A model generated the notes under the pieces. It ran no database searches and had not been told where the DNA came from. It was given only the letters and a program-made list of their open reading frames with translations. Position numbers and translations under genes: made by a program. This document shows, piece by piece, positions 9,702 to 49,662 of a DNA stretch of 64,000 nucleotides (position 1 is its first letter; every line of letters begins with the position of its first letter). Source of the DNA: Gekko japonicus (lineage: Eukaryota); NCBI RefSeq assembly GCF_001447785.1, contig NW_015169173.1, forward strand, positions 613,696 through 677,695. The letters are read 5' to 3'.

Positions 9702-10991
9702 TTACAGTGCTATTTGATGGAGCACTTTGCTGACATTCCCAACCAAAGACACATTATATCTCCAGAGACGTATGTCCCTAATGAGGGATTCTCTTGGAAG
9801 CTGTGGTTGCTTAGTAGCCCGGCAATGAAACAAAAAGCCAACATTCATTGGAACAAAAACATTGCTTCCGTATGCTTGGAGAGCTTTATGTACAGATTGC
9901 TGGATGACTTTCCTCGGATCAATTATCATCTTCCGAGGGTTCTCAATGGGGTTCTTGTCAGGCTCCCTGAAGACATGTTGCAGTATGTTGGTGCCAGGTA
10001 TGTTTCTCCAAGAGGAAATGTTGAATGGGTCATCAGGAGTGAATACATGTTCAGGGAAAAGATGGCTCTCAAAGAAGAAAACAGCAGCCATTGGATATTG
10101 GGTCTTAAGGTTCTGCATCATGCTTTTCCAGTCTGGATATTTAATGGGCAGAATAATTTCATCAATGTCATTCAGCAGCACATATTTGCTCCTGTACATA
10201 TTGCGATAGACGCAGTCATTTAAGGCTGTGATTTGTCCATAGTAGCCAATGTCCTTGGGATCCATTGAGTGATGCCAGTGAGGAGAAACATTGAGGTATA
10301 ATTCAATGGGCCAGAGAATTATTTCAACAATCCCTTCTGCAACATAAAAGTCCAGCACTTTCTCCATCAGTGGGCTGCAGCTGTTCTTGTAGATCACCAC
10401 TCGGCCCACCCCGAGGATTTTATACATCTCCATGCTCTGCACAAACTGCAAGACATTGTTGTATTCCCCAAACATGGTGGAAATGCAGACTGTAAACTCC
10501 ACAAGGGAACCCCCAGGTTCACGATTTCTGATTTCAAATAGTGGTAATGGGTCTGTATTGTCCTTTGGAGACCACTGAATTGTCACATAATGTGGATCCC
10601 AGTGCTCTGGTTGTGGACAATGCAAGTGTGTGGCACCATAAGGGAATTCAAATCTCTCAGAAAGGACATGTATTTCAGCCTTGGAAATATGTGTTTCACC
10701 ATTGGATGGGTTGCAAAACCGGCAGTAAAGTTCCTTGACCTCTTTGTGATGGACTATAGCAATCACTCGTGTCGTTCTGTTCTTCCTGTTGTCCAAGTAT
10801 GGAGCAATGATAAAGGTTCTATTATCTCTTAAGGGTGTGATGGTGTCATTGACAACAATCCCACGGCAGAGGCTGTTCTTCACCACTGGCATGAAAGAGA
10901 ATTTTCCATTGTAGAAGTAGGAATAGGTTGTTATTGATATGAAGATGGCAATGCAAACAACGGCAATCAAATTTGGTTTTGTCCCAGACAT
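9702..10991 (-). CDS. GT92/DUF23 glycosyltransferase, beta-1,4-galactosyltransferase galt-1-like (gene A), 429 aa, single coding exon
   Basis: Intact ORF; N-terminal type II membrane anchor (LIAVVCIAIFISITTYSYF); FTVCISTMFG motif, GQITALNDCVYR and DxD-type LNDIDEII motif; splice acceptor TACAG at 11040-11044 just upstream of the ATG. Confidence 0.92.
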   Translation of the reverse strand: MSGTKPNLIAVVCIAIFISITTYSYFYNGKFSFMPVVKNSLCRGIVVNDTITPLRDNRTFIIAPYLDNRKNRTTRVIAIVHHKEVKELYCRFCNPSNGETHISKAEIHVLSERFEFPYGATHLHCPQPEHWDPHYVTIQWSPKDNTDPLPLFEIRNREPGGSLVEFTVCISTMFGEYNNVLQFVQSMEMYKILGVGRVVIYKNSCSPLMEKVLDFYVAEGIVEIILWPIELYLNVSPHWHHSMDPKDIGYYGQITALNDCVYRNMYRSKYVLLNDIDEIILPIKYPDWKSMMQNLKTQYPMAAVFFFESHLFPEHVFTPDDPFNISSWRNIPGTNILQHVFREPDKNPIENPRKMIIDPRKVIQQSVHKALQAYGSNVFVPMNVGFLFHCRATKQPQLPRESLIRDIRLWRYNVSLVGNVSKVLHQIAL

Positions 10992-15916: not shown

Positions 15917-18516
15917 CTAGTACAGTTTCGTGTGGCTTGCAAAATGGAGCTGGACATCCCTCAGTTGGCCTCCCTGCTGCTGTTGCTACAGTCTTGTCAC
16001 TGACAGGCTGCCACTGATGACTTTTATAGCTCAGCTGTGGCCCAGTTGTTCCCAGCTTTGATGCTGAATGTGTATTGTGTATTGCTGCTATGCCCATCTT
16101 TTAAACTGTTTTATTGCTTAATATTTATTGTTTTTATTGCTTCATATTTATTTAATTGTCCATTGATGTAATTTATTGCTGTGACCCGCCCTGAGCCCAT
16201 GCACAGGAAGGGCGGGATATAAATCTAAATAAATAAATAGATCTCAAATTGCAGAACACCATTTACCAGTTAAATATCTGACTGTAACAGATCATCACCA
16301 TCATCAGTATTAGTATTATTTGAGGTGCATTTATTGTTTCCAAACTGCCAAGTAATCAGGAATAACCACCCAGGAATAATTAGCAGGGCAATGTTATGGA
16401 GAGATGAGAACAAAGGAGAGAAGCAGGGACCAAGGGCCAGGACAGCAAAGGGAGAACAACTTCCAGACCCCCTGTTGTGAAACAGTAGATACTTTCCTCT
16501 GACGTGCACCCCAGGCACATGGAAGTGAGGAGCAGGTCTCACCAGCCCTCTCTACATGACCCCTCCACATCCATGCTCCACCCCTGTAATATATAGTTTT
16601 GACAATATGACCTGTATTTCTTATATATTTTTGTCTTGTAAAGTACTTATATTAGCATTTTTAATAATGGACAAAATATTTCTTTAGAGTAGTCATGTAT
16701 ATTTTTCTATGGACTGGTCTTCATTGTTATATTTAAATTAGATATACACATGACCTATATTACATAGTGCCTCCCTGAATTGTAATAACAAATATAATTG
16801 ATATAAAATTGATATTGTATAAGAAATTCATTTGTAACAGGAGGTTTAAGGCAATTTTAACTGGTCCCTATCGTAACATTTAATTAAGAAATACATCGGA
16901 TTTACACTACATAATGCCTCCCTTATATACTGTTGCAGTAGGATACAGAAAGGATCAGCTATGAAACATTCAAAAATAGATGGGTGATAATTAAAATAAA
17001 TAAATGTTCTCAATTATGGACAAGGTACCTTTAAAATTTTCACACCTGGAAGTAATTAGTACCTGAGCATTCTATATGTAATGAATATGTACCGAACCCC
17101 AAGTTGAGATGCACTGGAGCTGTTGTAAATAATATGGTTTTCCCAACTTTAAATTGTAAAGCTCTGCGTCCAAAGGTAAGTTTACTTTCTGCATGCTTCG
17201 ATCTTCTCACATATTTTTACACATTAGGCTTAATATTGTATTCTTTCTACAGAAAACACCATTGTGTTTAGACTTCTACTTGGAATTTTATTGTAAACCC
17301 TCTGTGGGGTCAGGTAAGCATTCTAAGTCTTTTGGCATTGGTCCTATGTAAATTACGTGATAAGCCTATGCCCTGTATCGTTAGACTGTACTTGAGGCAT
17401 TCTCCCGCCGGGAATCTGATATGCAGAATTTTATAAGAGCTTGTGTGGTAATCAATGTAATAAGCCAAACATTATGTGCTGTTAAGATGTGTTGGGCTAA
17501 TAGAATGTCCTTGCTTCCAATGGGAGTCTGACATGCAGTGCCTGTGCATAGACTAAGTAGTAGCAAATGTAATTGATATTGTAACTGACTTTGTATAGAT
17601 GCTGACTTGACTTGACGGGGCTTAAGACATTTTGTAACAAGTTTGTTTTAATTATAGACTATAATGTTTTGATCTGAAGAAGACTATGCAGAAAAGAGGA
17701 GAATAATTAAATCCCGAAACCTCTTCATCAACTACTGGATTGATCTACTACCAAGTTGCTTGAACAAACTTCTATGAGACCTGTTTGAATAAATTTCCAA
17801 TTTCTACTTCATATTCATATCCTTAAGTCTGATCTTCTATTGGTGGATCCTTTTGCATGGAGTTACATATTTTATCATGTATTTAGACTGAAGAGCTTTG
17901 CTCTCGTATTACATTGGGTCGTCCCACGGACATTTTCTTCTTTCCTCTTTATAATTCTTGGTCCCTGTGGGATCCTCTTTATATAGTTTTGTATGATTTT
18001 GTGGCATATTTTATTTGGGAAACAAAACACTAAAAGATAAAAATCCAGATCTGAATTTAGCCTAAGGATAGGGATAGCTCTAGTTCCCACAATCTTCAGG
18101 AAGAAGTTACATTTGCCAGGAAAAAAGGGGCAATCAATACTGGAGGTGTAACAAGACCTCGAGGGGGAATTCCAGGCATACTGGTGGTTTCCACATGGGA
18201 ATAGGCTTGTGTTGTTACCCCTACCAGCTTTGATTTAAACAACTGAATAGCTGATTTTAGTTTCTGGGGGAAATTAGTCAAATGATAGGCCTCAGCAAGA
18301 GGTGGAGTAATAAGTGCGGATTTGCTATCAGTGTTTACAGAGATAGTCCCTCAGACTTGAGGGGCTTCTCTCAGGTAAAGACAAAAGATTTCCTGGACCA
18401 ATAAGGGGTCCCAGGGGGTGTGACACCAGGAGGAGCAAAACCTAGGTGTGACCAATAAGGTCCCAAAAGGGCAGAGTCTGGTGCAGGCCTCAGAAATGGG
18501 AGGGAGGTAAGTTAGC

Positions 18517-19626
18517 CAGGGGTGTAGCCAGAAAACTTTGGGTGGTGGGGCGTTGGGAAATCCTGTGGGGCAGGGGAGCTGGGGAAAAGAGAGAGAGACA
18601 GGGGCAACTGGTGAGCCTGCCGGCAGCAGAGCAAAAGGACTCGGATTGGTGGTGGTGGCCTCACTGCGCCTGCACCAGCCCAGCCATGTGACCTGCCATC
18701 ATGTGACCCGGGCTGGCTCAGTGAGGCCACCACCACCAAGCTGAGTCCTCTTTCTCTGCTGCCGGCAGGCTCGCCACTCGCGGCTTGAGCGGCATTTAAA
18801 AGGCAGGAGCCGAGTCCTCTCCTGTGTTTAAAAGGGGGAGCCAAGTCCTCTTCCTCAGCTACTGGCTTCTTCATCTTCAGGAGTTGGGGGAGGTAGGGTT
18901 GCCAAGTCCATCTTCCACCCCTAGTGGGGGACTTTGGGGGCGTTCCTGGAGGGGGTGGGGCATCCCCGACGTGATAACGTCATGTTGGGGACGTCTGCCG
19001 CCCCCCACCTGCCCGTGCGCTGGATCTCCAGAGACAGCCATTCCCTGCACTTAAAGGAGCCGGTGTTTCCCTTTTAAATGCAGGAGCCGGCGTTTCCCCT
19101 TTAAGAGCAGCCGCGTTTCCCTTTTAAGAACACGAAGCTGGCGTTTCCGTCCAAGCTTGCGGAGATCCGGCTTGGGAGGAAACACGGGTTCCACACACTT
19201 AAAGGGAGAGAGATGGGTGGCTGTGGGTGTTGGGGGTGGGGCTTTCCCCGCCGGTCATCTGGCCGGCGGCAGATAGACCCCCCCAAAACGGGGGACCCCT
19301 GGCAAACCGGGGGGGTTGGCAACCCTGGGGGGGAACCTCTGTCTCTCGTTTGCATTTTGCAATTTTATTTTATGTTTTTGCAATCTTATTTTATTTTATT
19401 TTATTGCAATCTTATTTTATTTTATTTTGCATTTTTAAAAACTTATTTATTTTATGGTCCAGAAAAAATAAAATGAGACTGAAGCTTCCCTGACTGTGCC
19501 CAAGGTCATTTTGGAAACCCCATGCACATCTTACATTTTAAAAATAGTTTTTTGAAATTTTCCAGTGGGTAATGCTCATCCTTGGGGAGGGCATTGCTCA
19601 ACAATGCCCCCATGGCTACAGGCCTG
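18517..19626. mobile_element. Non-autonomous hAT element with a nested TAGGGTTGCCA MITE (18894-19327)
   Basis: CAGGGGTGTAGCCA ... TGGCTACAGGCCTG; 8-bp TSD AAGTTAGC/AAATTAGC; paralog at ~29313 lacks the nested MITE. Confidence 0.65.
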
Positions 19627-20669
19627 AAATTAGCCATCCTTCCTCTCCCTTCACAGGGCTAGCTGTCCCTTTCATGCAGAGAAATGGCTTCACCTACTGC
19701 TTTGACCTGACTACCTGTTCATCATTTATATGAACAAACCACCCTTCCCCTCCACCCCTGCATCAATCCCAGCAGCCCTTCACACCTTCACCATTCACAA
19801 GTTGCCAATCTGGGGCTGGCTTGTCGATCACACCTCCTTTCTTTCCCCCTCTTCCTTTTACTCCTCATCCCCTTCTACTGGGCCATGGACCTGCCCCTGA
19901 CCAGTTTTTGCCCACTCTGTCTCTATCCTCCATCTTGGAGGTGGGGGAAGTGGCTGGCTCATCCTCAGGGCTGGCTTGGAGTATGGTTTCCTCCCCCAGT
20001 GGTGGCAGACTCTGCTGGGGTTTTTGCTTCACTGCTGGCAGGCTCTCCACTTGCCTGCTGCTGCTGCCACTATCAGCTGGGGGATGCCAGCATTGCCACC
20101 AACCCCACACTTGATGTTGGGCAGCTCAGCCTCCTCTCCCCTCACTGGACATGTTCCCAGGTTCCCTGTTGACCCCAGGTAAGAATCTGGCCATCTCCCA
20201 GTTGCCTCGGGGTCTCCCATGAGATCAAGAAGCCACACAACACTTGGCATGTGGGAAGGAGGCCACTGGCTCTGGACAAATTGAATATGATTATATCAAT
20301 ACACCATTTAAACAACCTGTGCATCAGGTTCTCTGAATCGCCAGCTTTCATTTGCAAACTAAGTCGCTATCCCCTTTTGTTGAAGAAATATGCCTTTTCC
20401 CTTCTATCTCTACAACTAAAGAGCTAGAGATTTACTTTTTTTTAAATGAAGGATGAGAATGCAGAGATCCTGTTACCCAAGTTTGTTATAATGCTATATC
20501 AATAATGTTCATTTGTTCACACTAAGTTAAATGTATCTATATGAATGTCATATAAGATGTGCTTCTATTTTTGTAAGTAAAATTTCTTTCTCTTGTTACC
20601 ATTGGATTCATATCATCTTTGTAATTTGTTTGAACAGCATTTCCCCCTTAACCAGGAATTATGGAGGAT

Positions 20670-22400
20670 TGGGGATACTACATATCTTGTGGCACCCAGC
20701 TGGGCATTTGTTAGGAAACTGCATGGGTTCATGAAGGGCTTGCACCTACTGCACCAAAGGACTAGGGTCACCAGGGGTATGATGACCTCTTTGTATGGAA
20801 AGAATTTTTTGATTCATACAATGGGGTTAGTAGTTCCTGTCCTTTCGGGAGGAAGCAGGTCTGAGACAGGTCTGGCCATACCAATGTCTGGCATCTGGAT
20901 ATGAGGAGAAGAAGGGCAACTTCTGTATAAGGAAGACACTTGAAAGCTCGTCGGGAGAGTTTTTTCTGAAATGGCATTATGCCCCGTGAAGGCCTTATGC
21001 CAGTATTTAGCTATGCGGGCTGAGGGTGAAGGGTACAAGATGCTATGAGGGATACATGCAGGATTGCAAAGTTTGATGTTGTTTGTTATTAAGTTCTTTT
21101 TTCAGGTGCTGCACCCTGGTGTTGAAAGCAGAGGCGGATCTTGCGATGATAAGAGCAAGGAGGCCTGGAGTGCAGATGGTCTGGTCGGCTATTCTGCCTC
21201 ACCATGAAGGGCATGGCCCTGGTGTTACAAGCAGAGGCTGACCTGGTGATGATATGAGCAAGGTGGCCCTGAGTACAGATAGTCGGGTTGGCTATTCTGC
21301 CCCACCAGATGTGGTATAACTTGGGAGACCCCTGCGCCATTGACCGTGTCAGGCATAAGGCTAACAGGCAAATGAGAAAGGCTATGGGGGGGTAGTTTAG
21401 GGCAATTTTTGCTGCACCCCGACATACGGGTTGAGTTCCAGGACCTGTATAGAGTGGATGGGGTACACCTGTCAGACAAGGGCATTGGGTTATTCTTAGA
21501 GGACTTGCGGCAAGGGATTAGCTATGCCTTGTGCTGTTAGTGGGAGCAAAGGCCAAAGCAGAGGCTTGTTCTTGGCTGTGGCAGGTTGGTGCGGGCAAGA
21601 AACCGGAACCGGTGAGCACCTTACACAGGGCTATTTTGGGGCAGGAACGCACAGGATCAGAGTTCTGGCTGGCTTCAGAGTTGGCCACACCCACTACAGC
21701 CAAAACCTCTGCATGTGTGGTTACAGAGGGAAGGCCTGGAGAGCAACTCCGAGGCAGGTTGGCCATGGAGGGGGGGCGGCTCTGGAAGAACTGGGAAGGC
21801 ATTTAAATGCCTCCCCATGCCTTCCCCAGCCTGTCCAAGGGCTGGCTTGCTCAGGCTTGCCAAGGGAAGGCATGGGTGTGTGGCTTAATATGCTAATGAG
21901 CTGGGCTGTCAGGGTGTGACCTAATATGCTAATGCGTTTCTGCTGCTGGGTGTGGCCTATTATGCTAATTAGTTCCTGCTGGGCTTTTTCTACAAAAAAA
22001 GCCCTGACCTTACGGCATTTCCCCCCTTTGGGAACAGGGGGTCATCAGGAACTGCCTTCGGATTTCTAAGGTCCAAGGTGGTGAACGGTGATCACCTCTG
22101 GGAACCTCTTAGGGTACACTCCTCTCTGCAAGTTGGAAGGCTCCAGGGGTAGGTGCTCCTAGGTGGCAACCAGTTTTGCTGAGCTGCCAATTGCGAGCCA
22201 GAGCACTGGCTCAAGTCCGGTGCTGAGTGACCCACCTGAGAAGAGGGCAAGGAGGTTGGTCAGGGGAGTGACACCTGCCTTGCCTGTTCCGTGCTCACTT
22301 AGCTGGTCCCTTGCTGCAATGTTATGTTAAATAGTTAATAAAGTGGCCCTTGTTTACTTCCAAACTGTTGTCTGTCTCGTTATTCTGACTGGGGGGGGCA
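20670..22400 (+). mobile_element. Degenerate Ngaro/DIRS-group tyrosine-recombinase retrotransposon
   Basis: YR-like LCPVKALCQYLAMR (~20975-21020); SGNH-hydrolase-like ...HPDIRVEFQDLYRVDGVHLSDKGIGLFLEDL (~21415-21510); AATAAA-containing terminus; absent from the paralogous segment. Confidence 0.6.
21626..22006. mobile_element. hAT MITE nested in the Ngaro-like element
   Basis: CAGGGCT...AGCCCTG ends; TSD ACCTTACA/ACCTTACG; ATGCTAATGAG subterminal repeats. Confidence 0.7.
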
Positions 22401-22477
22401 AATGACCACCACATGGACCGAGGCAGGGAAAATGCCTGCCTCGTGGGTGGCTGTTACCCATACAGAAGCCAACCCGG

Positions 22478-24787
22478 TGTAACAGGCTGGATTAACCCCC
22501 CGGCCAGAGCAACCCCGGGGTTACTCTGGCCGGGGGGGTGAATCTGGCCTGTTACAGCCGGCCAGATTAACCCGGGGTTACTCTAGCCTAGGCCAGAATA
22601 ACCCCTCCGGGGTTATTCTAGGCTAGGCCAGAATAACCCCGGGGTTACTCTGGCCGGGGGGGTGAATCTGGCCTGTTACAGCCGGCCAGATTAACCCGGG
22701 GTTACTCTAGCCTAGGCCAGAATAACCCCTCCGGGGTTATTCTAGGCTAGGCCAGAATAACCCCGGGGTTACTCTGGCCGGGGGGGTGAATCTGGCCTGT
22801 TACAGCCGGCCAGATTAACCCGGGGTTACTCTAGCCTAGGCCAGAATAACCCCTCCGGGGTTATTCTAGGCTAGGCCAGAATAACCCCGGGGTTACTCTG
22901 GCCGGGGGGGTGAATCTGGCCTGTTACAGCCGGCCAGATTAACCCGGGGTTACTCTAGCCTAGGCCAGAATAACCCCTCCGGGGTTATTCTAGGCTAGGC
23001 CAGAATAACCCCGGGGTTACTCTGGCCGGGGGGGTGAATCTGGCCTGTTACAGCCGGCCAGATTAACCCGGGGTTACTCTAGCCTAGGCCAGAATAACCC
23101 CTCCGGGGTTATTCTAGGCTAGGCCAGAATAACCCCGGGGTTACTCTGGCCGGGGGGGTGAATCTGGCCTGTTACAGCCGGCCAGATTAACCCGGGGTTA
23201 CTCTAGCCTAGGCCAGAATAACCCCTCCGGGGTTATTCTAGGCTAGGCCAGAATAACCCCGGGGTTACTCTGGCCGGGGGGGTGAATCTGGCCTGTTACA
23301 GCCGGCCAGATTAACCCGGGGTTACTCTAGCCTAGGCCAGAATAACCCCTCCGGGGTTATTCTAGGCTAGGCCAGAATAACCCCGGGGTTACTCTGGCCG
23401 GGGGGGTGAATCTGGCCTGTTACAGCCGGCCAGATTAACCCGGGGTTACTCTAGCCTAGGCCAGAATAACCCCTCCGGGGTTATTCTAGGCTAGGCCAGA
23501 ATAACCCCGGGGTTACTCTGGCCGGGGGGGTGAATCTGGCCTGTTACAGCCGGCCAGATTAACCCGGGGTTACTCTAGCCTAGGCCAGAATAACCCCTCC
23601 GGGGTTATTCTAGGCTAGGCCAGAATAACCCCGGGGTTACTCTGGCCGGGGGGGTGAATCTGGCCTGTTACAGCCGGCCAGATTAACCCGGGGTTACTCT
23701 AGCCTAGGCCAGAATAACCCCTCCGGGGTTATTCTAGGCTAGGCCAGAATAACCCCGGGGTTACTCTGGCCGGGGGGGTGAATCTGGCCTGTTACAGCCG
23801 GCCAGATTAACCCGGGGTTACTCTAGCCTAGGCCAGAATAACCCCTCCGGGGTTATTCTAGGCTAGGCCAGAATAACCCCGGGGTTACTCTGGCCGGGGG
23901 GGTGAATCTGGCCTGTTACAGCCGGCCAGATTAACCCGGGGTTACTCTAGCCTAGGCCAGAATAACCCCTCCGGGGTTATTCTAGGCTAGGCCAGAATAA
24001 CCCCGGGGTTACTCTGGCCGGGGGGGTGAATCTGGCCTGTTACAGCCGGCCAGATTAACCCGGGGTTACTCTAGCCTAGGCCAGAATAACCCCTCCGGGG
24101 TTATTCTAGGCTAGGCCAGAATAACCCCGGGGTTACTCTGGCCGGGGGGGTGAATCTGGCCTGTTACAGCCGGCCAGATTAACCCGGGGTTACTCTAGCC
24201 TAGGCCAGAATAACCCCTCCGGGGTTATTCTAGGCTAGGCCAGAATAACCCCGGGGTTACTCTGGCCGGGGGGGTGAATCTGGCCTGTTACAGCCGGCCA
24301 GATTAACCCGGGGTTACTCTAGCCTAGGCCAGAATAACCCCTCCGGGGTTATTCTAGGCTAGGCCAGAATAACCCCGGGGTTACTCTGGCCGGGGGGGTG
24401 AATCTGGCCTGTTACAGCCGGCCAGATTAACCCGGGGTTACTCTAGCCTAGGCCAGAATAACCCCTCCGGGGTTATTCTAGGCTAGGCCAGAATAACCCC
24501 GGGGTTACTCTGGCCGGGGGGGTGAATCTGGCCTGTTACAGCCGGCCAGATTAACCCGGGGTTACTCTAGCCTAGGCCAGAATAACCCCTCCGGGGTTAT
24601 TCTAGGCTAGGCCAGAATAACCCCGGGGTTACTCTGGCCGGGGGGGTGAATCTGGCCTGTTACAGCCGGCCAGATTAACCCGGGGTTACTCTAGCCTAGG
24701 CCAGAATAACCCCTCCGGGGTTATTCTAGGCTAGGCCAGAATAACCCCGGGGTTACTCTGGCCGGGGGGTTAATCCGGCCTGTTACA
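22478..24787. mobile_element. Ginger1-like non-autonomous DNA transposon filled with a tandem array
   Basis: TGTAACAGG...CCTGTTACA termini; ~54-bp TIRs with 3 mismatches; CCGG at 22474-22477 and 24788-24791; empty site at ~31961 in the paralogous copy. Confidence 0.7.
22511..24770. repeat. 124-bp tandem array, ~18 apparently identical copies, each with three CCGG-centred palindromes
   Basis: GCCAGATTAA at 22561, 22685 ... 24421 (1860 bp = 15 x 124). Confidence 0.97.
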
Positions 24788-25654
24788 CCGGCTTTACAGC
24801 AATCTTATCCAAAACATCACAGCAAAGCGGGTTTAAGAAAGACTGAAGAAAAGCTTGGAAACCTTCAGAGGGTGCAGAGACCCACCACAGTGGTATGGGT
24901 AAGCAGGATCTCATAATCAACATTATTGTGCTCAAGTCACATTTATGATTTCTGACATCAAAAAGTATAATTATCAGGCCTAATCCAATGCTTCATAAAT
25001 GGAATTTTGTTCATATTAACTGTCAACTGTCTGTAAAATTAATTTGCACTAGTCTGTAAAAAATTCACAACCCCTGCAAATCAGGAATGCACTCTGAGTT
25101 TTGGACCTAGCAGAAACTAAGCTACTGACAAGATTCATTTTGGCACAGCTCTCAGTTACTCACGTTAATTTGGCACTAAGGGGCTTCCATCTTTTGATTA
25201 CTGGAATTGTCATCTACAGTTTACAAGGACTGAGAAAAATGTTTTCTTGTTGGACTCTAAAAATGTGCACTTTATCGTTGTGTTGCATTACAGCATGATT
25301 GATATTTATATAATAATTTTTCATGTTTAAAAAAGATTACCCTTACACAGTTGTTCGTCATGCTGAAAGCATTGTAGACATTTCCAGAACTACAAAATAT
25401 GCCCCACATTAACGTGCGACTTAGCCACATCTATAAATTATATTGGGGGTTTAGAGTTCCTTTCTTTCTTTGTATTTTTGAAACAAAGACAATACAAATT
25501 ATGAGTGTTAAACTTGTACAAACACGATAGACCAGTTATTCTTGAAGGGCATTACGACATTCTCTGTTGCAACATAGTGAACTCTCTGGAATGAAGGTCA
25601 TACAACTTTCTAAGATCCAAAAACCTATCACTTTATATTTAAAAAGAAGAAGAA

Positions 25655-25778
25655 GAACATGCAATCAAGTCACAACTGACTCATGGTGACCCCCACAGGG
25701 TATTCTAGGGAAGAGGCACACAGAAGTGGTTTGCCATTGCCTTCCTCTGCATAGCAACCCCAGGCATCCTCGGTTGTC
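25655..25778 (-). mobile_element. 5S-derived SINE truncated at the duplication breakpoint
   Basis: Nearly identical to 32815-32940, where the SINE continues into its 5S head. Confidence 0.7.
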
Positions 25779-26197: not shown

Positions 26198-26773
26198 TAA
26201 AGCTTTTAATATATATTGTTGCTAAGATGGAAATGCTTTATATGGTAAAATATTAGTTAGCTTTGTTATGTATGAGAATGTTGATTAGATACTATGACAC
26301 TGTAACTCTCTCGCTTTTATTTTTTCTTTTTGGAAAATTAATTTAAAAAAATTTTTTTAAAGAAAATTTACAAGGCCTGCAATACTTCCCTTAAAATTAT
26401 TTCTTTTAGAGGTCAGTTAAAAGCTTGACACTGCAATTCTATGCACAATTACTCAAGTCTAAACCCCATAGATTTAGCAGATATGACCGGATGTCAGTTG
26501 AGAAAATACAAATGGAGCTACCAATTGCTGCACTTGGCCAGGTTCATCACAGCCATAAGTTTTCTCATTGGCTAGAACAAGGGAGATGGAACAAACTTTC
26601 TTTCAGTCATAGCGATTACTTGCCTCATTGGTTAGAACAAGGGAAGGGGGAACACTGTCAGTGGAACACTCTCAGTGAATGGCCCCCTCCTTCCACTGTT
26701 CTTATTTCTACAGCACCACTTCACTAAATGCTCATGCCCATCAGTGAGATCTCTCTCGGCTATATCCCCTACC

Positions 26774-27672
26774 TTACAGTACTGTTTGATGGAGCTCTTT
26801 GCTGACATTCCCAACAAAAGACACATTATATCTCCAGAGACTTATGTCCCTAATGAGGGATTCTCTTGGAAGCTGTGGTTGCTTAGTAGCCCGGCAATGA
26901 AACAAAAAGCCAACATTCATTGGAGTAAAAACATTGCTTCTGTATGCTTGGAGAGCTTTATGTACAGATTGCTGGACAACTTTCCTTGGATCAATTATCT
27001 TCCGAGGGTTCTCAACTGGATTCTTGTCATGCTCCCTGAAGACATGTTGCAGTACGTTGGTGCCAAGTATCTTTCTCCAAGAGGAAATGTTGAATGGGTC
27101 ATCAGGAGTGAATACATGTTTAGGGGAAAGATGGCTCTCAAAGAAGAAAACAGCAACCATTGGATATTGGCCCAAGGTTCTGCATCATGATTTTCCAGTC
27201 TGGATATTTAATGGGCAGAATAATTTCATCTAAATCATTCAGCAGCACATATTTGCTCCTGTACATGTTGCGATAGATGCAGTCATTTAAGGCTGTGATT
27301 TGTCCATAGTGGCCAGTGTCCTTGGGATCCATTGAGTGATGAAAGTAAGAAGAAACATTGAGGTATAAATCAATTGGCCAGGGAATTATTTCAACAATCC
27401 CCTCTGCGACATAAAAATCCAGCACTTTCTCCATCAGTGGGCTGCAGCTGTTCTTGTAGATCACCACTCGGCCCGCCCCGAGGATTTTATACATCTCCAT
27501 GCTTGTCCTTATAGATACCAGGGGAATCTTCAGGTTTCACTGTATACTGTTTTCAGTGGATATGAGTCTACTCATCTAAGCCTTAATGAAGATCAGGGAT
27601 TTCTCTCTCACAAGCTAGTGATGCCAGCCTCCAGGTGAGACCTGTAGACTGCAAGACATTGTTGAATTCCCG
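26774..27672 (-). pseudogene. GT92 pseudogene (recent duplicate of gene A, 5'-deleted)
   Basis: ORFs 27138-27500 and 26774-27175 match gene A; frameshift near 27170; ~140-bp insertion at 27501-27640; start codon, TM anchor and acceptor missing. Confidence 0.9.
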
Positions 27673-30480
27673 AAGGTAAAAGAAAGTATCTAAAACTTGT
27701 GGAGCTGTGCCCTCCCTTCCGGAATGAACAGGGTGAAGGAATATGGACTACCTTGCTGTCCCAAGAAGTCGTGAAACAGTAGATACATTCCTCTGACGTG
27801 CACCCCAGGCACATGGAAGTGAGGAGCAGAACTCACCAGCCCTCTCTACATGACCCCTCCACATCCATGCTCCATCCCTGTAATTAGGGATGCTGCCTTT
27901 TGAATGTTTCCTGATCATTAGCATATGTATGCACACTTCCTCCACATGGAGGCACTGTGCTCACGATAAGCCAGAGATCATGAGCAGAGTCTGGCCAATG
28001 CACGCATGTCTTCTCTTCAGTTGAATCTGCATTTGCATTTCTAAATCAGTTTCGTGCTGCTGTGACGCCGTCTTTCTCTATGCTTGTTTGAACGTTGTTT
28101 GGAGAAGATTCTTTTAAAGCAGTGCGGGGGTGCAACGACAGTGGAGCCACCACGAAAGGGCGATAAACATAGGTGGACGTGCAAAAGTATGCTAGCACTC
28201 TTGAGATGTGAAGACGAAACCAAATGTAGACAGCTTTTTTGACAATGGAGTCAGAAGGCTAGGACACCGGTGGGAAAGACAAATCCAGATTCGACCGAAT
28301 TCCTGTCCATGTATTGACTAAGTGTGCAGAGGGGTCGTGTGTAGAGGGCTACCTTATCTCCACTCTGGCAGTAGTTTGCTTCACTCAGCTGTGTCGGAAG
28401 TAGGGGATAGGGACTAGGAGTTGTAAGGGAACTTCTCAGCCAGTACAACTTACCAGACTACAAATGTTTGTACAGCATTGCCTACCATAATTTGCTCCTC
28501 TACACAAATGTGACTGTCAGGATGTAAGTAAAAAAAAAGAGGATGGATTAGGGTGTTTTTTTTTGGGGGGGGTGACAGAGTGAAAGAGATGCTTTGGGGG
28601 AGAAGGCTGTATTAGGAAAAACGAACACTGTGACACTCATAGAAACCATGTAAGAGATCGCTGTGCTTGCATGTGACAGGCCTCCATTACAGTCAGAGGG
28701 AAGAATTCTCTCAGAGTTGTAGGCTAAAAACACCTTAACCTTATTGTTAATTTGACAGCCCATCACTCTTCTAAGCAGTTACACACATTATGGATTCTCA
28801 GTTGGATTGTTCTTGTATGGTTTTGTGACATATTTTATTTGGGAAACAAAACACTAAAAGATAAAAATCCAGATTTGAATTTAGCCTAAGGATAGGGATA
28901 GCTCTAGTTCCCACAGTCTTCAGGAAGAAGTTTCATTTGCCAGACAAAAAGGGGAAATCAATACTGGAGGTGTAACAATAGACAAGACCACGAGGGGAAT
29001 TCCAGGCATACTGGTAGTTTCCACGTGGGAACAGGCATGTGTGGTTTCCTCGTTAACTGGTGCAGCTGCTGATACAGCACAGTGGCAATGGTGCCTCCAC
29101 ATGGCACGTTTCCTCACAGTTTGCCTGCCCTAGTCCCCCATTAGTGCCATGGACCTTCCCCCAAATCACTGGGGCTTTCTCAGTTGTTTTAAAAATCAAC
29201 AATTACGTGATGTTCTCGCCCCTCTGTCTGCGTCTTGCTACCTTCCACTGTCCTTCCTCTCCCCTGGCAATTCTCCCTAGCCGGCCTCAGAAACAGGAGG
29301 GAGGTAAGTTAGCCAGGGGTGTAGCCAGAAAATTTTGGGTGGTGGGGCGTTGGGAAATCCTGTGGGGTAGGGGAGCCAGGGGAAAGAGAGAGAGAGAGAG
29401 TGGCAACTGGTGAGCCTGCCCACAGCAGAGGAAGAGGACTCGGCTTGGCGGTGGTGGCCTCACTGCGCCTGCACCAGCCCAGCCATGTGACCTGCCATTA
29501 TGTGACCTGGGCTGGCTCAGTGAAGTCATTGCCACCAAGCTGAGTCCTCTTCCACTGCTGCAGGCAGGCTCACCGCTCACAGCTGGGGTGTCATTTAAAA
29601 GGCGGAAGCCGAGTCCTCTCTTGTGTTTAAAAGGGGAACCTGAGTCCTCTTCCTCAAATACTGGCTTCTTCATCTTCAGGAGTTGTGGGGGACGGACCTC
29701 TGACTGTCTCTCTTTTGGATTTTGCAATGTTTATTTTGCAGTTTTATTTTGCATTTTTTAAAAACTTATTTATTTTTCAGCCCGGAAAAAATAAAATGAG
29801 ACTGAAGCTTCCCTGACTGTGCCCGGGGTCATTTTGGAAGCACCACGCACAAATAATGTTAAAAATATTATTTGAAATTTTTCCACAGGGTAATTCTTAT
29901 CCTTGGGGAGGATAAACGCCTTGGCAGGCCGGCTGGGAAAGAGAAGAGGAGGCTTTTGAATATGCCTCCCCCCCTTTTTTGCTTCCCCAGCCGGCCTGCC
30001 AAGACGGGCTGGGTGGGGGGAAGCAAAGTGAGAAGGGGTTTATCCTCCCCAAGGATAAGAATTACCCTGTGGAAATACAATGGAAAGATCGTGCCACCCC
30101 TGCGGCGCGACTCTAGAGAGAATGGGTTTAAAATATAAACCCCTTCTCTCTTCTTCAGGGGGAAAGGAGGGCATGTCTGACCGCCTCCCCTTCCCCTCCC
30201 CTGCCAACCCACCGGCTTTGGGGCACCTGGAGAAGATCAGGCTGGGAAGCCAGGCATTTAATTCTCCCCCCTTGGGAGAGAGGTGGGGCCTGGGGTCGTT
30301 ACTGCCGGAGCGCTGCTCTGGGGCGCTCCAGCAGGAAATGACCCCTGTGAATATGTCATATAAGTTGTGCTTCTATTTTTGTAAGTAAAATTTCTTTCTC
30401 TTGTTACCATTGGAGTCAGATCATCTTCGTAATTTTTTTTGAACAGCATTTCCCCCTTAACCAGGAATTATGGAGGATAC

Positions 30481-31820
30481 CAGGGGTCTTTTCCTAGAAA
30501 AAGAGCTTCAGAAGCTCATTAACATATGGTATGCTAATGAGATACTAGGCTATTAGCATAATAGCTCATTAGCATATGCAACGCCCCCTGACATCACCGG
30601 AAGTGCGGGGGAAGGCATGTTCAAAAGCCTCCCCTTCCCTTCCCCAGCGGGGGGGGGGGAGCGAAGAGAGAAGGGGTTTAAAGTTTAAACCCCTTCTCAC
30701 TAGAGTTGGGCCGCAGAAGGAGGAAAGAGGGAAGGAAAGAGAGAGAGAGTAGAGAGAAGACTCTGTTAGGTATTGTGATTGTGATTCAGAGGAGATTGAA
30801 ACAATCGAACATGTATTCCTCTATTGTAGTTTGCATGATGACATTCGGGCACTTTATTTAGAAGCTATTCTTAAGAAGGATGTCAAGCAATCTGATGACA
30901 GAATGTTGTACCGTTTACTGGTTTTATATTTAAATATTTTATATATATTATTGGTACCCTTTTGTATTGTTTGTAATTGGGCTGGTGATATACCGAATAA
31001 ACTGAATACTGATACTGATACTGGCTTCACAAAATATAGAGGTTATTGAAGCGGTGGCTAAGTTCTGTAACTGAATCATAATGAGGAAGCTGTGTGTTAA
31101 ACCCATGAATTGAAGGGTGACTGTTTATGATTCTGATCGATGCCAATAAAGGTTTTGNNNNNNNNNNNNNNNNNNNNNNNNNNNNNNNNNNNNNNNNNNN
31201 NNNNNNNNNNNNNNNNNNNNNNNNNNNNNNNNNNNNNNNNNNNNNNNNNNNNNNNNNNNNNNNNNNNNNNNNNNNNNNNNNNNNNNAAAAGGAGAGAATG
31301 AAAGGAGGGAAAGAAAAAAAGCNNNNNNNNNNNNNNNNNNNGAAGGAAAAGAGAGGAAGGAAGGAAGAGAAGTGAAAGAGAGAAAGAAAAGGAGGGAAAG
31401 AAAAGGAAAGGGGAAGGAAAGGAGGGAAAGAAAGAGGGCAAAGAAATGGGGGGAGGCTCTCCCACCCCCACCCCCCAATCAAGCCTCCGCCACCTCCCAC
31501 AGATCCCTCACTTACCCCGGGAGGTGGCAGCAGGGGGGCCTCTTCTGGCCTCCCAGGGTCGCAGTGCTCCGGCACTGGAACTGGGAGGCGGCGGTGGGGC
31601 TCTTCTGGCCTCCCAGGGCCGCAGCACTCCGGTGCTGGCACTGGGAGGCAGCGGGGTGGCCTCTTCTTGGCTCCCAGGGCCGCAGTGCTCTGGCGGTGGC
31701 CCGGGGAGGCAGCAGGGAGCCACAGCACGGAGAGCTGGGGGCGGGGCTTGCTGCTGCCACCTCTGGTGGCTGGGCTCCCAAAGCAGTGCTCCAGTGCACT
31801 CCGGCCCCAAAAGACCCCTG
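30481..31820. mobile_element. Non-autonomous hAT element with a nested LINE 3' fragment and ~60-bp internal repeats
   Basis: CAGGGGTCTTTT...AAAAGACCCCTG; perfect 8-bp TSD GAGGATAC; CDCDSEEIETIEHVFLYC at ~30775; ~3 GC-rich repeats at 31520-31715; contains N gaps. Confidence 0.8.
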
Positions 31821-33075
31821 GAGGATACTGTGTAGAGTTTCTGTGCTTCCAAGTCAACACTGACTTTTTTACATTTAACCCAATAGAAATGACCACCACA
31901 TGGACCGAGGCAGGGGAAATGCCTGCCTTGTGGGTGGCTGTTGCCCATACAGAAGCCATCCCAAGTTTACAGCAATGTTTTCCAAAACATCACAGCAAAG
32001 CGAGTTTAAGAAAGCCTAGAAACCTTCAGAGTGTGCACAGACCCACCACAGTGGAATGGGGAAAGAGGATCTCATATACAACATTATTGTGCTCAAGTTG
32101 CATTGATGATTTCTGGCATCAAAAAGTATCATTATCAGGCTTAATCCAATGCTTCACAACTGAATTTTGTTCCAATTAACTAGCTCCTAAAACAATTTGC
32201 AGTAGTCTGTAAAAAAATTAGCAACCCCTGCATATCAGGAAAAAGAATGCCTCCTCTGAGTTTTGGACATAGCAGAAACTGACTAAGCTATAGACAAGAT
32301 TCATTTTGGTACAGGACTCAGTTCCTCGTGTTAATTGGGCACTAAGGGGCTTCCATCTTTTGATTACTGGAATTGTCATCTACAGTTTACAAGTCTGAGA
32401 GAAATGTTCTCTTGTTGTACTCTAGAAATGTGTACTTTATTGTTGTTTTGTATTATAGCATGATTGATATTTATACAATAATTTTTAATGCTTAAAAAGA
32501 TCAACTTTACACAGTTGTTTGTCACACTGAAAGAATTGTAGACATTTCCAGAACTACAAAATATGCCCCATATTAACATGCAACTTAGCCACATCTATAA
32601 ATTATATTGGGGGTTTAGAGTTCCTTTCTTTCTTTGTATTTTTGAAATAAAAACAACACAAAAATTATGAGTGTTAAACTTGTACAAACACGATAGACCA
32701 GTTATTATTGGAGGGCACTACGACATTCTCTGTTGCAACATAGTGAACTCTCTGGAATGAAGGTCATACAACTTTCTAAGATCCAAAAACCTATCACTTT
32801 ATATTTAAAAAGAAGAAGAAGAACATGCAATCAAGTCACAACTGACTCATGGTGACCCCCACAGGGTATTCTAGGGAAGAGGCACACAGAAGTGGTTTGC
32901 CATTGCCTTCCTCTGCATAGCAACCCCAGGCATCCTTGGTGGTCTTCCATCCAAGTACTGCTTAGTGGACAACTTTGCTTAGCTTCCAAGTTCTGACAAG
33001 CTCAACTGGGTTATGCAGGCTGCATACGTAAGCCATATATTTAAGCTACCAACAAATATGGATGAATTCACTGCA

Positions 33076-48366: not shown

Positions 48367-49662
48367 TTATGAAATTATTTGTTGGAGAACTTTGTTGACA
48401 TTCCCAATTAGTGACACATTGTATCTCCAGAGTGTTGTGTCCTTAATGAGTGATTCTCGAGGAAGATCTACTTGTTGAGGAACCCGGCAATGATAGATAA
48501 GAGCAACATCCATCGGGACCTCAATGCTATTCCCATACATCTGGAGAACAGAGTGGACGGACGTCTGAACCACTTTATTTGGATCAATGATAATTTTCCG
48601 AGGATTGAAGACGTTTTTCCTGTCAGGTTCCCGAACAACGTGACTCAGTATATTAACTCCAGGAACTGTGCTCCAAGAGGAGATGTTGAACATGTCAGTG
48701 GGTGTAAATACAGTTTTGGGGAAGATGTGATTCTCAAAGAGGAAAGCACCAGCATCTGGATGTTGCTGTTGAAGGTTCTGCATCATGGTTTTCCAGTCTG
48801 CATATTTCCCTGGCAGAATAATTTCATCCATGTCATTCAGCAACACATATCTGCTCCTGTACATGTTGCGATAGACGCAGTCATTTAAGGCCGTAATTTG
48901 TCCATAGTAGCCAATGTCCTTGGGATCCATTGAGTGATGCCAGTGAAAAGAGACCTTGAGGTAGGAATCAATGGGCCAGGGGATTACCTCGACAGTCCCT
49001 TCTGCAATGTAGTAATCCAGCACTTTCTCCATCAGTGGGCTGCAGCTGTTCTTGTAGATCACCACTCGGGCCACCCCGAGGATTTTATACATCTCCATGC
49101 TCTGCACAAACTGCAGGACGTTGTTGTACTCTCCAAACATGGTTGAGATGCAGACTGTGAAGTCAACAAGGGAACCTTCAGGATCACGGTTTCTTATTTC
49201 AAAAAGTGGTAGCTGGTCAATATCTCCTTTAGGAGACCAATGTATTGACACGTAATGTGGTTCCCAGTCTTGTGGTTCCAGACATTTCACGTCTGTGGCA
49301 CCGTAAGGGAAGTCAAATCTATCAGAATGGACATCTATTTGAGCCTTGGAGATGTATATTTCACCATTGGATGAGTGGCAGAACCAGCAGTAAAGTTCCT
49401 TGACGTCTTTGTGGTGGACTATAGAAATCACTCGTGTCATATTGTTCTTTCTGTTGTCAAAGTATGGAGCAATGATAAAGGTTCTATTATCTTTTAAGGG
49501 TGTCATGGTGTTCGTGGCGGGAATCCCTCGGCAGAGGTTCTTCTTCACTCTAAGCGTGAAAGAGAATTTTCTATTCAGGAGGTAGGAATAGGTCATTATT
49601 GACATGAAGGTGGCAATGTAAACGATGGCAATCACATTTGGTTTTGTCCAAGAACAAGTCAT
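48367..49662 (-). CDS. GT92/DUF23 glycosyltransferase, beta-1,4-galactosyltransferase galt-1-like (gene B), 431 aa, single coding exon
   Basis: Intact ORF; TM anchor VIAIVYIATFMSIMTYSYLL; FTVCISTMFG, LNDCVYRNMY and LNDMDEII motifs; acceptor TACAG at 49711-49715. Confidence 0.93.
   Translation of the reverse strand: MTCSWTKPNVIAIVYIATFMSIMTYSYLLNRKFSFTLRVKKNLCRGIPATNTMTPLKDNRTFIIAPYFDNRKNNMTRVISIVHHKDVKELYCWFCHSSNGEIYISKAQIDVHSDRFDFPYGATDVKCLEPQDWEPHYVSIHWSPKGDIDQLPLFEIRNRDPEGSLVDFTVCISTMFGEYNNVLQFVQSMEMYKILGVARVVIYKNSCSPLMEKVLDYYIAEGTVEVIPWPIDSYLKVSFHWHHSMDPKDIGYYGQITALNDCVYRNMYRSRYVLLNDMDEIILPGKYADWKTMMQNLQQQHPDAGAFLFENHIFPKTVFTPTDMFNISSWSTVPGVNILSHVVREPDRKNVFNPRKIIIDPNKVVQTSVHSVLQMYGNSIEVPMDVALIYHCRVPQQVDLPRESLIKDTTLWRYNVSLIGNVNKVLQQIIS

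What the first reader, a model, noticed from the sequence alone, without database searches (positions are those of the whole stretch)
22474..24791. Apparently young Ginger1-like DNA transposon (TGTAA ends, CCGG TSD) in a squamate, with its empty site visible nearby
Seen: the 2310-bp insert begins TGTAACAGGCTGGATTAACCCCCCGGCCAGAG and ends with the near-exact reverse complement (~54-bp TIR, 3 mismatches). It is bracketed by CCGG on both sides. The paralogous duplicate at 31951-31970 reads AGAAGCCATC-CCAA-GTTTAC, a single 4-bp position with no insert, so the insertion most simply postdates the local duplication. Known: TGTNR termini, long TIRs and 4-bp CCGG/CCGT target duplications are the described signature of Ginger1 (Gypsy-integrase-like DDE) transposons. 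These are mainly reported from invertebrates, while vertebrates are best known for the domesticated GIN genes. The other MITEs in this window have 8-bp or 3-bp TSDs. Inference: a recently active Ginger1 family, with an autonomous partner somewhere in this genome.
Basis: partly seen in the sequence, partly recalled or inferred. Interest (0 to 1): 0.8.

Follow-up and report, generated by a model that had tools for sequence, protein, structure and literature searches.

The report
Ginger1-type transposon carrying its own satellite
A 2.3-kb cut-and-paste DNA transposon without a gene of its own, whose ends and CCGG target duplication match the Ginger1 type, sits between glycosyltransferase genes; its interior is 18 near-perfect tandem copies of a piece of its own end, which is a tidy but not unprecedented example of a transposon seeding a small satellite.

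Summary
A 2310-bp insert lies at 22478-24787. It has 54-bp terminal inverted repeats (TIRs) with 3 mismatches that start TGTAA, and CCGG on both sides. The local paralogue has a single 4-mer (CCAA, 31961-31964) at that position and no insert.

The interior is a 79-nt foldback head, then 17 identical 124-nt units, then a 123-nt last unit. All of it is built from one 15-nt motif, GGCCAGARTAACCCC, in alternating orientation. It holds 94 CCGG sites and no ORF.

Raw reads of the same species pile up about 17-fold deeper on the TIR than on the adjacent flank. About 94% of them carry the right TIR's letters at two left-TIR mismatches. So this is a multi-copy family, and it also occurs in two other coded organisms. 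One contig from another data set follows the left flank through CCGG and then leaves into unrelated sequence, which looks like a second empty site.

The Ginger1 assignment rests on the signature only: TGTNR ends, a 4-bp CCGG target duplication and TIR length. No transposase link could be tested. Earlier notes from this scan report OTU-bearing Ginger1 copies elsewhere in this genome (called a gecko) and read this same stretch as a satellite. Verdict: a new member of a known kind, of moderate interest.

The parts
22474..22477 (.). Left copy of the 4-bp target site duplication, CCGG
   Evidence: A contig of run X1 lies on 22374-22477 and leaves the reference exactly after this CCGG (table 8, record 7).
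22478..22531 (+). Left TIR, 54 nt, starting TGTAA. It holds two direct copies of the 15-nt motif, at 22485-22499 and 22502-22516.
   Evidence: About 94% of reads show C at 22488 and T at 22510, the letters of the right TIR (table 3).
22478..22556 (+). 79-nt foldback head: the left TIR paired with an internal copy of the right terminus (...GGCCTGTTACA)
   Evidence: It folds as a near-perfect DNA hairpin at -35.9 kcal/mol, z = -10.2.
22557..24664 (+). 17 identical 124-nt units. Each is GCCGG, then a roughly 100-nt palindrome of motif copies, then a right-terminus copy. Each has 5 CCGG sites and 7 motif copies.
   Evidence: TRF gives period 124, 18.5 copies, 99% match. Unit census, motif map, hairpin at -44.4 kcal/mol with z = -8.4.
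24665..24787 (+). Last unit, 123 nt, ending in the true right terminus
24734..24787 (-). Right TIR, 54 nt; its letters are those most family reads show at 22488 and 22510
24788..24791 (.). Right copy of the target site duplication, CCGG
31961..31964 (.). Unoccupied paralogous site, a single 4-mer CCAA, inside the duplicate block 31887-32944

Best explanation
This is a non-autonomous, MITE-like cut-and-paste DNA transposon of the Ginger1 type. It inserted at a CCGG between two glycosyltransferase-92 paralogues after the local duplication, and the 4-bp staggered cut duplicated the CCGG. It encodes nothing. Presumably it moves when a Gypsy-integrase-like Ginger1 transposase made elsewhere in the genome binds its ends. 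Each end is TGTAACA followed by two copies of a 15-nt motif, GGCCAGARTAACCCC, which I take to be the transposase-binding site (inferred). A 124-nt stretch made of that motif plus a copy of the right terminus then expanded to about 18 head-to-tail copies. The likely mechanism is replication slippage or unequal exchange helped by the strong hairpins. This turned the element into a small CpG-rich satellite bounded by working ends. Shown here: the insertion, the target duplication, the empty site, the anatomy and the multi-copy family. Inferred: the enzyme, the motif's role and the way the array grew.
For: The ends, the CCGG duplication and the empty paralogue are. CCGG is rare outside the element, about 1 per 720 bp. 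The published Ginger1 signature is a 4-bp target duplication that is CCGG in 75% and CCGT/ACGG in 24% of cases, 5' TGTNR ends and TIRs of 40-270 bp. All three are met. Related superfamilies differ: Ginger2 targets AT-rich RTATAY, GingerRoot/IS3EU makes 6-bp duplications with TA..TA ends, and piggyBac ends CC..GG. Family evidence: in raw run X13, depth is 244 on the TIR bin against 14 on the adjacent flank. About 94% of reads carry C at 22488, and about 91% carry T at 22510. The contig runs of two other coded organisms show 20-33 times the flank depth. An X1 contig with 1 mismatch and 1 gap over 104 nt stops matching exactly after CCGG and runs on for 413 nt of unlike sequence. Array anatomy is, and hairpins. 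There is no ORF above 47 codons inside the element. Transposons that seed tandem arrays are documented: Tetris (PMC4079207), and a hobo array of about 16 copies plus TE dimers (PMC5932611).
Against: No copy with a transposase was seen, so the superfamily call rests on end and target signatures from a single insertion. The paralogous empty site differs from CCGG-C at three adjacent bases, so the ancestral target sequence is not directly seen. The two TIRs differ at 3 of 54 positions, which is not the mark of a brand-new insertion. Family boundaries and family-wide target duplications are therefore untested. The letters of the X1 contig beyond 22477 were not shown. It could be an empty allele or a very recent empty duplicate. 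Copy number is rough because no bin of the laid stretch is clearly single-copy.
Confidence: 0.7

Rival explanations
1. It is a TIR or foldback-type element of another, or an unclassified, superfamily. It merely happens to have TGT..ACA ends and, at this one site, a CCGG duplication.
For: Only one insertion was examined and no transposase was linked. The body is a foldback-like stack of palindromes, as in Drosophila foldback elements such as Tetris.
Against: A 4-bp duplication, CCGG in particular (1 per 720 bp), TGTNR ends and a 54-bp TIR are jointly the published diagnosis of Ginger1. The other superfamilies I considered with 4-bp duplications have different targets or termini, for example piggyBac with CC..GG ends and TTAA for piggyBac and Kolobok (my own knowledge).
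Confidence: 0.15
2. The element is real, but the array as written (18.5 units, 17 of them identical) is partly an assembly product. The true locus would have fewer, more, or more varied units.
For: Seventeen letter-perfect 124-nt copies are unusual. Hairpin-rich, G-run-rich repeats are hard to assemble. Reads show length variants in the G runs (table 4). The reads tool could not lay the full array.
Against: Unit-specific bins have depths of 100-200 in X13, so such units are common in the genome. Both junctions are clean and the period is exact. Young arrays can be this uniform.
Confidence: 0.12
3. The array grew from a tandem double insertion. A second copy landed in the CCGG regenerated beside the first, the inner left terminus was then lost, and the dimer expanded by unequal exchange. 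The alternative is a plain internal duplication.
For: Every unit ends in a right-terminus copy followed by G+CCGG and then a left-end sequence that starts at position 8. A CCGG-specific element recreates its own target on both sides. Insertion-site preference is the main source of TE dimers, and a hobo dimer expanded to about 16 copies (PMC5932611).
Against: The internal junction is off by one base from a canonical terminus-CCGG junction and lacks 9 nt of the left terminus. Slippage between the many direct 15-nt motif copies explains the unit without a second insertion.
Confidence: 0.2

Closest known systems
Ginger1 DNA transposons (Bao, Kapitonov and Jurka 2010, PMC2836005)
   Same: 5' TGTNR ends (TGTAA), TIR length within 40-270 bp (54 bp), and a 4-bp target duplication with the preferred sequence CCGG. 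Non-autonomous copies sharing the ends of an autonomous one were described in lancelet.
   Different: There is no transposase here. The host is apparently an amniote, where the literature I could search reports only domesticated GIN genes and old relics. The interior is a satellite made of the end motif, which the Ginger papers I read do not describe.
Tetris foldback element and its TIR-220 satellite in Drosophila virilis (PMC4079207)
   Same: A non-autonomous TIR element whose end-derived internal tandem repeats expand into satellite-like arrays, with a foldback-prone structure.
   Different: A different host and presumably a different transposase. Here the array lies between the two TIRs of a single 2.3-kb insertion and is letter-perfect. 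No separate kb-scale arrays were demonstrated.
Tandem TE dimers and the roughly 16-copy hobo array (McGurk and Barbash 2018, PMC5932611)
   Same: A DNA transposon expanded to a comparable number of tandem copies, and target preference proposed as the source of the first dimer.
   Different: Those units are whole elements. Here the unit is a 124-nt part with a truncated left end, and the junction is not canonical.
Ginger2/TDD, GingerRoot/IS3EU and IS481EU (other integrase-related DNA transposons)
   Same: Some share TG..CA-type ends and short target duplications.
   Different: Ginger2 targets AT-rich RTATAY. GingerRoot/IS3EU makes 6-bp duplications with mostly TA..TA ends. IS481EU is known only from parabasalids and has discrete duplication lengths. 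None matches CCGG with 4 bp and TGTAA.

Membership tests
Ginger1 | 4-bp target site duplication | tested here: met
   CCGG on both sides. The paralogous empty site holds a single 4-mer, and the gapless alignment scores best with one CCGG kept. An X1 contig leaves the reference exactly after CCGG.
Ginger1 | Target sequence CCGG (75%) or CCGT/ACGG (24%) across the family | tested here: inconclusive
   Met for this one copy. Other copies could not be fetched, and the loose-end rows at the junction were cut, so there is no family tabulation.
Ginger1 | 5' TGTNR ... 3' YNACA termini | tested here: met
   TGTAA ... TTACA, against the definition.
Ginger1 | Terminal inverted repeats of about 40-270 bp | tested here: met
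   54 bp with 3 mismatches.
Ginger1 | Encodes, or shares ends with a copy that encodes, a Gypsy-like integrase transposase (YPYY, H2C2, DDE, GPY/F, with an OTU or Ulp1 domain) | not testable with these tools
   There is no ORF above 47 codons in the element. Ginger1 protein seeds exist only as text in a paper's supplement with no reference usable in the tools. Earlier notes of OTU-bearing Ginger1 copies in this genome were not verified, and their ends were not compared.
Ginger1 | Dispersed multi-copy family with the same ends | tested here: met
   X13 depth is 244 on the TIR bin against 14 on the adjacent flank, and about 94% of reads carry C at 22488 (91% T at 22510). The family is also present in the runs of organisms B and C. 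There is no second copy in this window.
Ginger2/TDD | 4-5-bp duplication in an AT-rich RTATAY target | tested here: not met
   The target here is CCGG. Definition.
GingerRoot / IS3EU | 6-bp duplication, mostly TA..TA termini, TIRs of 100-150 bp | tested here: not met
   4-bp duplication, TG..CA termini and a 54-bp TIR. Definitions.
TE-derived satellite / foldback-type element (Tetris-like) | Tandem repeats derived from the element's own terminal region, lying within or between its TIRs | tested here: met
   The 124-nt unit is built from the TIR motif and holds a terminus copy, in 18 copies. This is a structural class, not a transposase family.

The most novel reading that the evidence does not exclude
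Ginger1 is, or was until very recently, mobile in an amniote, with this insertion still segregating (an empty allele in another individual). Because the element recreates and multiplies its own CCGG target and its putative transposase-binding motif (about 130 motif copies and 94 CCGG sites in 2.3 kb), it would act as a self-target and transposase sink from which satellites are born.
Probability: 0.2. Interest if true: 0.6.

Novelty: new member of a known kind. Interest (0 to 1): 0.4.

Why it matters
In the literature I could search, Ginger1 in tetrapods is known only from domesticated GIN genes and ancient relics. A multi-copy family with clean target duplications and a possibly unfixed insertion would show that integrase-type cut-and-paste transposition lasted much longer in reptiles. 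The locus also catches a transposon at the moment its end motif becomes a small, perfectly homogeneous satellite. That is useful for the question of how satellites start. The value is incremental: both phenomena are known in kind, and this scan had already flagged Ginger1 copies elsewhere in this genome.

Tried and rejected
The right junction, reads that skip the insert, and the loose-end rows at 22477/22478 (cut from the output by far more abundant MITEs) were therefore not seen.

2. I scanned metagenome contigs twice and viral contigs once for the TIR and the motif pair. There were no matches, as expected for an animal repeat.

No other copies and no record name for the organism could be fetched.

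4. I looked for a transposase in the window. The ORFs of 100 aa or more gave only two GT92 genes among the ten scanned, and the element has no ORF.

5. I looked for other family copies in the window. There are none, only chance 10-13-mers.

6. A solo LTR (TG..CA ends with a 4-bp duplication) was rejected. The ends are a 54-nt inverted repeat and the body is a stack of palindromes.

7. Two independent MITEs flanking an older satellite were rejected. The paralogue shows one 4-mer and no array, and the outer CCGG pair brackets the whole 2310 bp.

8. The double-insertion origin of the array was kept only as a weak rival, because the inner junction is not canonical.

9. Using Ginger1 integrase sequences from the supplement of Bao 2010 as search seeds was left out.

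10. A word search with short stop-free translations of the TIR was considered and dropped as a long shot that did not justify its cost.

11. The organism is coded. I did not verify 'squamate' or 'gecko' myself. CpG depletion (observed/expected 0.31) fits a vertebrate.

Full report
**What is there**

Reading 22380-24900 shows CCGG at 22474-22477 and an insert from 22478 to 24787. The insert begins TGTAACAGGCTGGATTAACCCCCCGGCCAGAG and ends with the reverse complement of that string. CCGG follows again at 24788-24791. The 32-nt end pattern occurs exactly twice in the 64-kb window, once on each strand, with none expected by chance. The two ends match over 54 nt with three mismatches, at positions 11, 33 and 47.

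**The empty site**

The flanks belong to a collinear local duplication, 17989-25778 against 28813-32944. It consists of six blocks of 84-95% identity, with a weighted mean of 89%. It is part of a tandem cluster of glycosyltransferase-92 genes.

In the second copy the sequence runs straight through...CAGAAGCCATC-CCAA-GTTTACAG.... Removing the insert and one CCGG from the first copy gives a gapless alignment. That alignment scores better than keeping both CCGG or neither: 203 against 192 and 198. The insertion therefore came after the duplication and duplicated 4 bp.

There is one blemish. The paralogue differs from the reconstructed target at three adjacent bases (GGC against AAG) right at the site. 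The ancestral CCGG is therefore inferred from the duplication itself, not seen in the paralogue. CCGG is rare here, with 85 sites in the other 61 kb, about 1 per 720 positions.

Tandem Repeats Finder reports a 124-bp period with 18.5 copies at 99% match across 22502-24792. Cutting after each copy of CCTGTTACA gives three parts:
- a 79-nt head (22478-22556);
- seventeen 124-nt units that are identical to the letter (22557-24664);
- a last unit of 123 nt that ends in the true right terminus (24665-24787).

The head is the left TIR folded against an internal copy of the right terminus. Each unit is GCCGG, then a roughly 100-nt palindrome, then the terminus copy.

The whole element is made of one 15-nt motif, GGCCAGARTAACCCC, in alternating orientation. 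There are seven copies per unit and two direct copies inside each TIR. The motif does not occur anywhere else in the window.

As single strands, the head and the units fold into near-perfect hairpins (z = -10.2 and -8.4). The element carries 94 CCGG sites and has no stop-free stretch above 47 codons. An earlier first-stage note on this same stretch (s1-818747) had read it as a satellite built from the transposon's end. I agree with that reading.

**Is it a family?**

The window has no second copy.

In raw run X13 (same species label, about 1.7 billion letters read), depth is 14 in the bin just left of the insert and 244 in the first TIR bin. It is 100-200 over the unit. At two of the three TIR mismatches most reads carry the right TIR's letter. 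At 22488, 238 of 252 reads show C. At 22510, 203 of 222 reads show T.

So the right TIR carries the form most reads show, the left TIR has two changes of its own, and there are many other termini in the genome. I put the number at tens to a few hundred. No bin of the laid stretch is clearly single-copy, so the scale is rough.

Contig runs of two other coded organisms (X3, X5) also hold the TIR at 20-33 times their flank depth.

One X1 contig of 516 nt lies on 22374-22477 with one mismatch and one gap, and then continues for 413 nt that do not match the TIR. Its match starts 26 nt upstream of where the window's own paralogue begins to align. It is therefore not that paralogue. It is either an empty allele in another individual or a very recent empty duplicate. 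Its further letters were not shown, and the loose-end rows at the junction were cut from the output.

**What kind of element**

Bao et al. (PMC2836005) define Ginger1 by these features:
- TIRs of 40-270 bp;
- 5' TGTNR ends;
- highly specific 4-bp duplications, CCGG in 75% and CCGT/ACGG in 24% of cases;
- a Gypsy-like integrase transposase with YPYY, H2C2, DDE and GPY/F motifs plus an OTU or Ulp1 domain.

The first three are met here. The fourth cannot be tested. The only Ginger1 protein sequences I could see are text in a supplement, which may not be typed into the tools.

The related superfamilies do not fit. Ginger2 prefers AT-rich RTATAY. GingerRoot/IS3EU makes 6-bp duplications with TA..TA ends. 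IS481EU is confined to parabasalids. piggyBac has CC..GG ends.

I therefore file it as Ginger1-type by signature, at about 0.7. Earlier notes of this scan (s1-830822, s1-830841, s1-835272, s1-821626) report OTU-bearing Ginger1 copies in the same genome, which they call a gecko. I could not check those notes or compare their ends, so they are leads, not evidence.

**How it most likely works**

Shown:
- a cut-and-paste style insertion with a 4-bp staggered target cut at CCGG;
- a family of like ends;
- an interior made of repeated end motif.

Inferred:
- A Ginger1 integrase made elsewhere binds the 15-nt motif pairs next to TGTAACA and moves the element.
- A 124-nt block containing seven motif copies and a terminus copy was duplicated and then expanded by slippage or unequal exchange. 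The hairpins would favour this.
- The expansion or last homogenisation is very recent, because 2.1 kb of CpG-rich repeat carries no difference at all.

A double-insertion start, with a second copy landing in the regenerated CCGG, is attractive in the light of McGurk and Barbash (PMC5932611). However, the inner junction is off by one base and lacks 9 nt of the left terminus. I give that reading about 0.2.

The written copy number could be partly an assembly product. I could not test this.

**Novelty and score**

In the literature I could search, Ginger1 in tetrapods means GIN1/GIN2 and old relics in alligator, turtle, coelacanth and frog. I found no paper on Ginger in geckos. I could not consult Repbase or Dfam.

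Transposons that seed satellites are well known: Tetris and hobo. This is a new member of known kinds. It is neat and informative, it was already noticed on other DNA of this genome by the scan, and it still lacks the transposase link. Interest is 0.4.

Noticed in passing
window 9702-10991 (-), 48367-49662 (-), and the degenerate copy around 26362-27503: A tandem cluster of single-exon glycosyltransferase family 92 genes. The ORFs are 429 and 431 aa and match PF01697 at E = 4e-38 and 1e-41. They sit in repeat units of roughly 17-22 kb, and the transposon lies between two of them.
   Followed up: partly
window 21626-22006: A very abundant MITE with CAGGG...CCCTG ends and an imperfect 8-bp duplication (ACCTTACA / ACCTTACG), which looks hAT-like. 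Read depth reaches about 34,000 in X13 against 4-14 for the quietest bins. Thousands of reads join 21688 to 21984 on opposite strands, which suggests foldback or rearranged forms.
   Followed up: partly
window 31027-31959 (-): The 310-aa ORF listed next to the empty site runs through two N runs (31158-31286 and 31323-31341) and has no Pfam match. It is an artefact of the masked letters, not a gene. The N runs were left as they are.
   Followed up: yes
window 22374-22477 (contig of run X1): A 516-nt contig from another data set of the same species matches the left flank up to and including CCGG, then runs 413 nt into unlike sequence. It may be an empty allele, which would make the insertion polymorphic, or a very recent empty duplicate. 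Its letters were not available.
   Followed up: partly
window 31963-31965 against 22476-22477 plus 24792: There are three adjacent mismatches (AAG against GGC) exactly at the insertion site, between paralogues that are otherwise about 95% alike over the 76 nt to the left. This may be CpG decay in the empty copy, or a CCGG that arose only in the copy that was hit.
   Followed up: no
window 22478-24787: The insert holds 94 CpG, all within CCGG, in a genome with CpG observed/expected of 0.31. It amounts to a 2.3-kb block of HpaII/MspI sites about 1.6 kb from the neighbouring GT92 copy. Its methylation state and any effect on the neighbouring genes are unknown.
   Followed up: no
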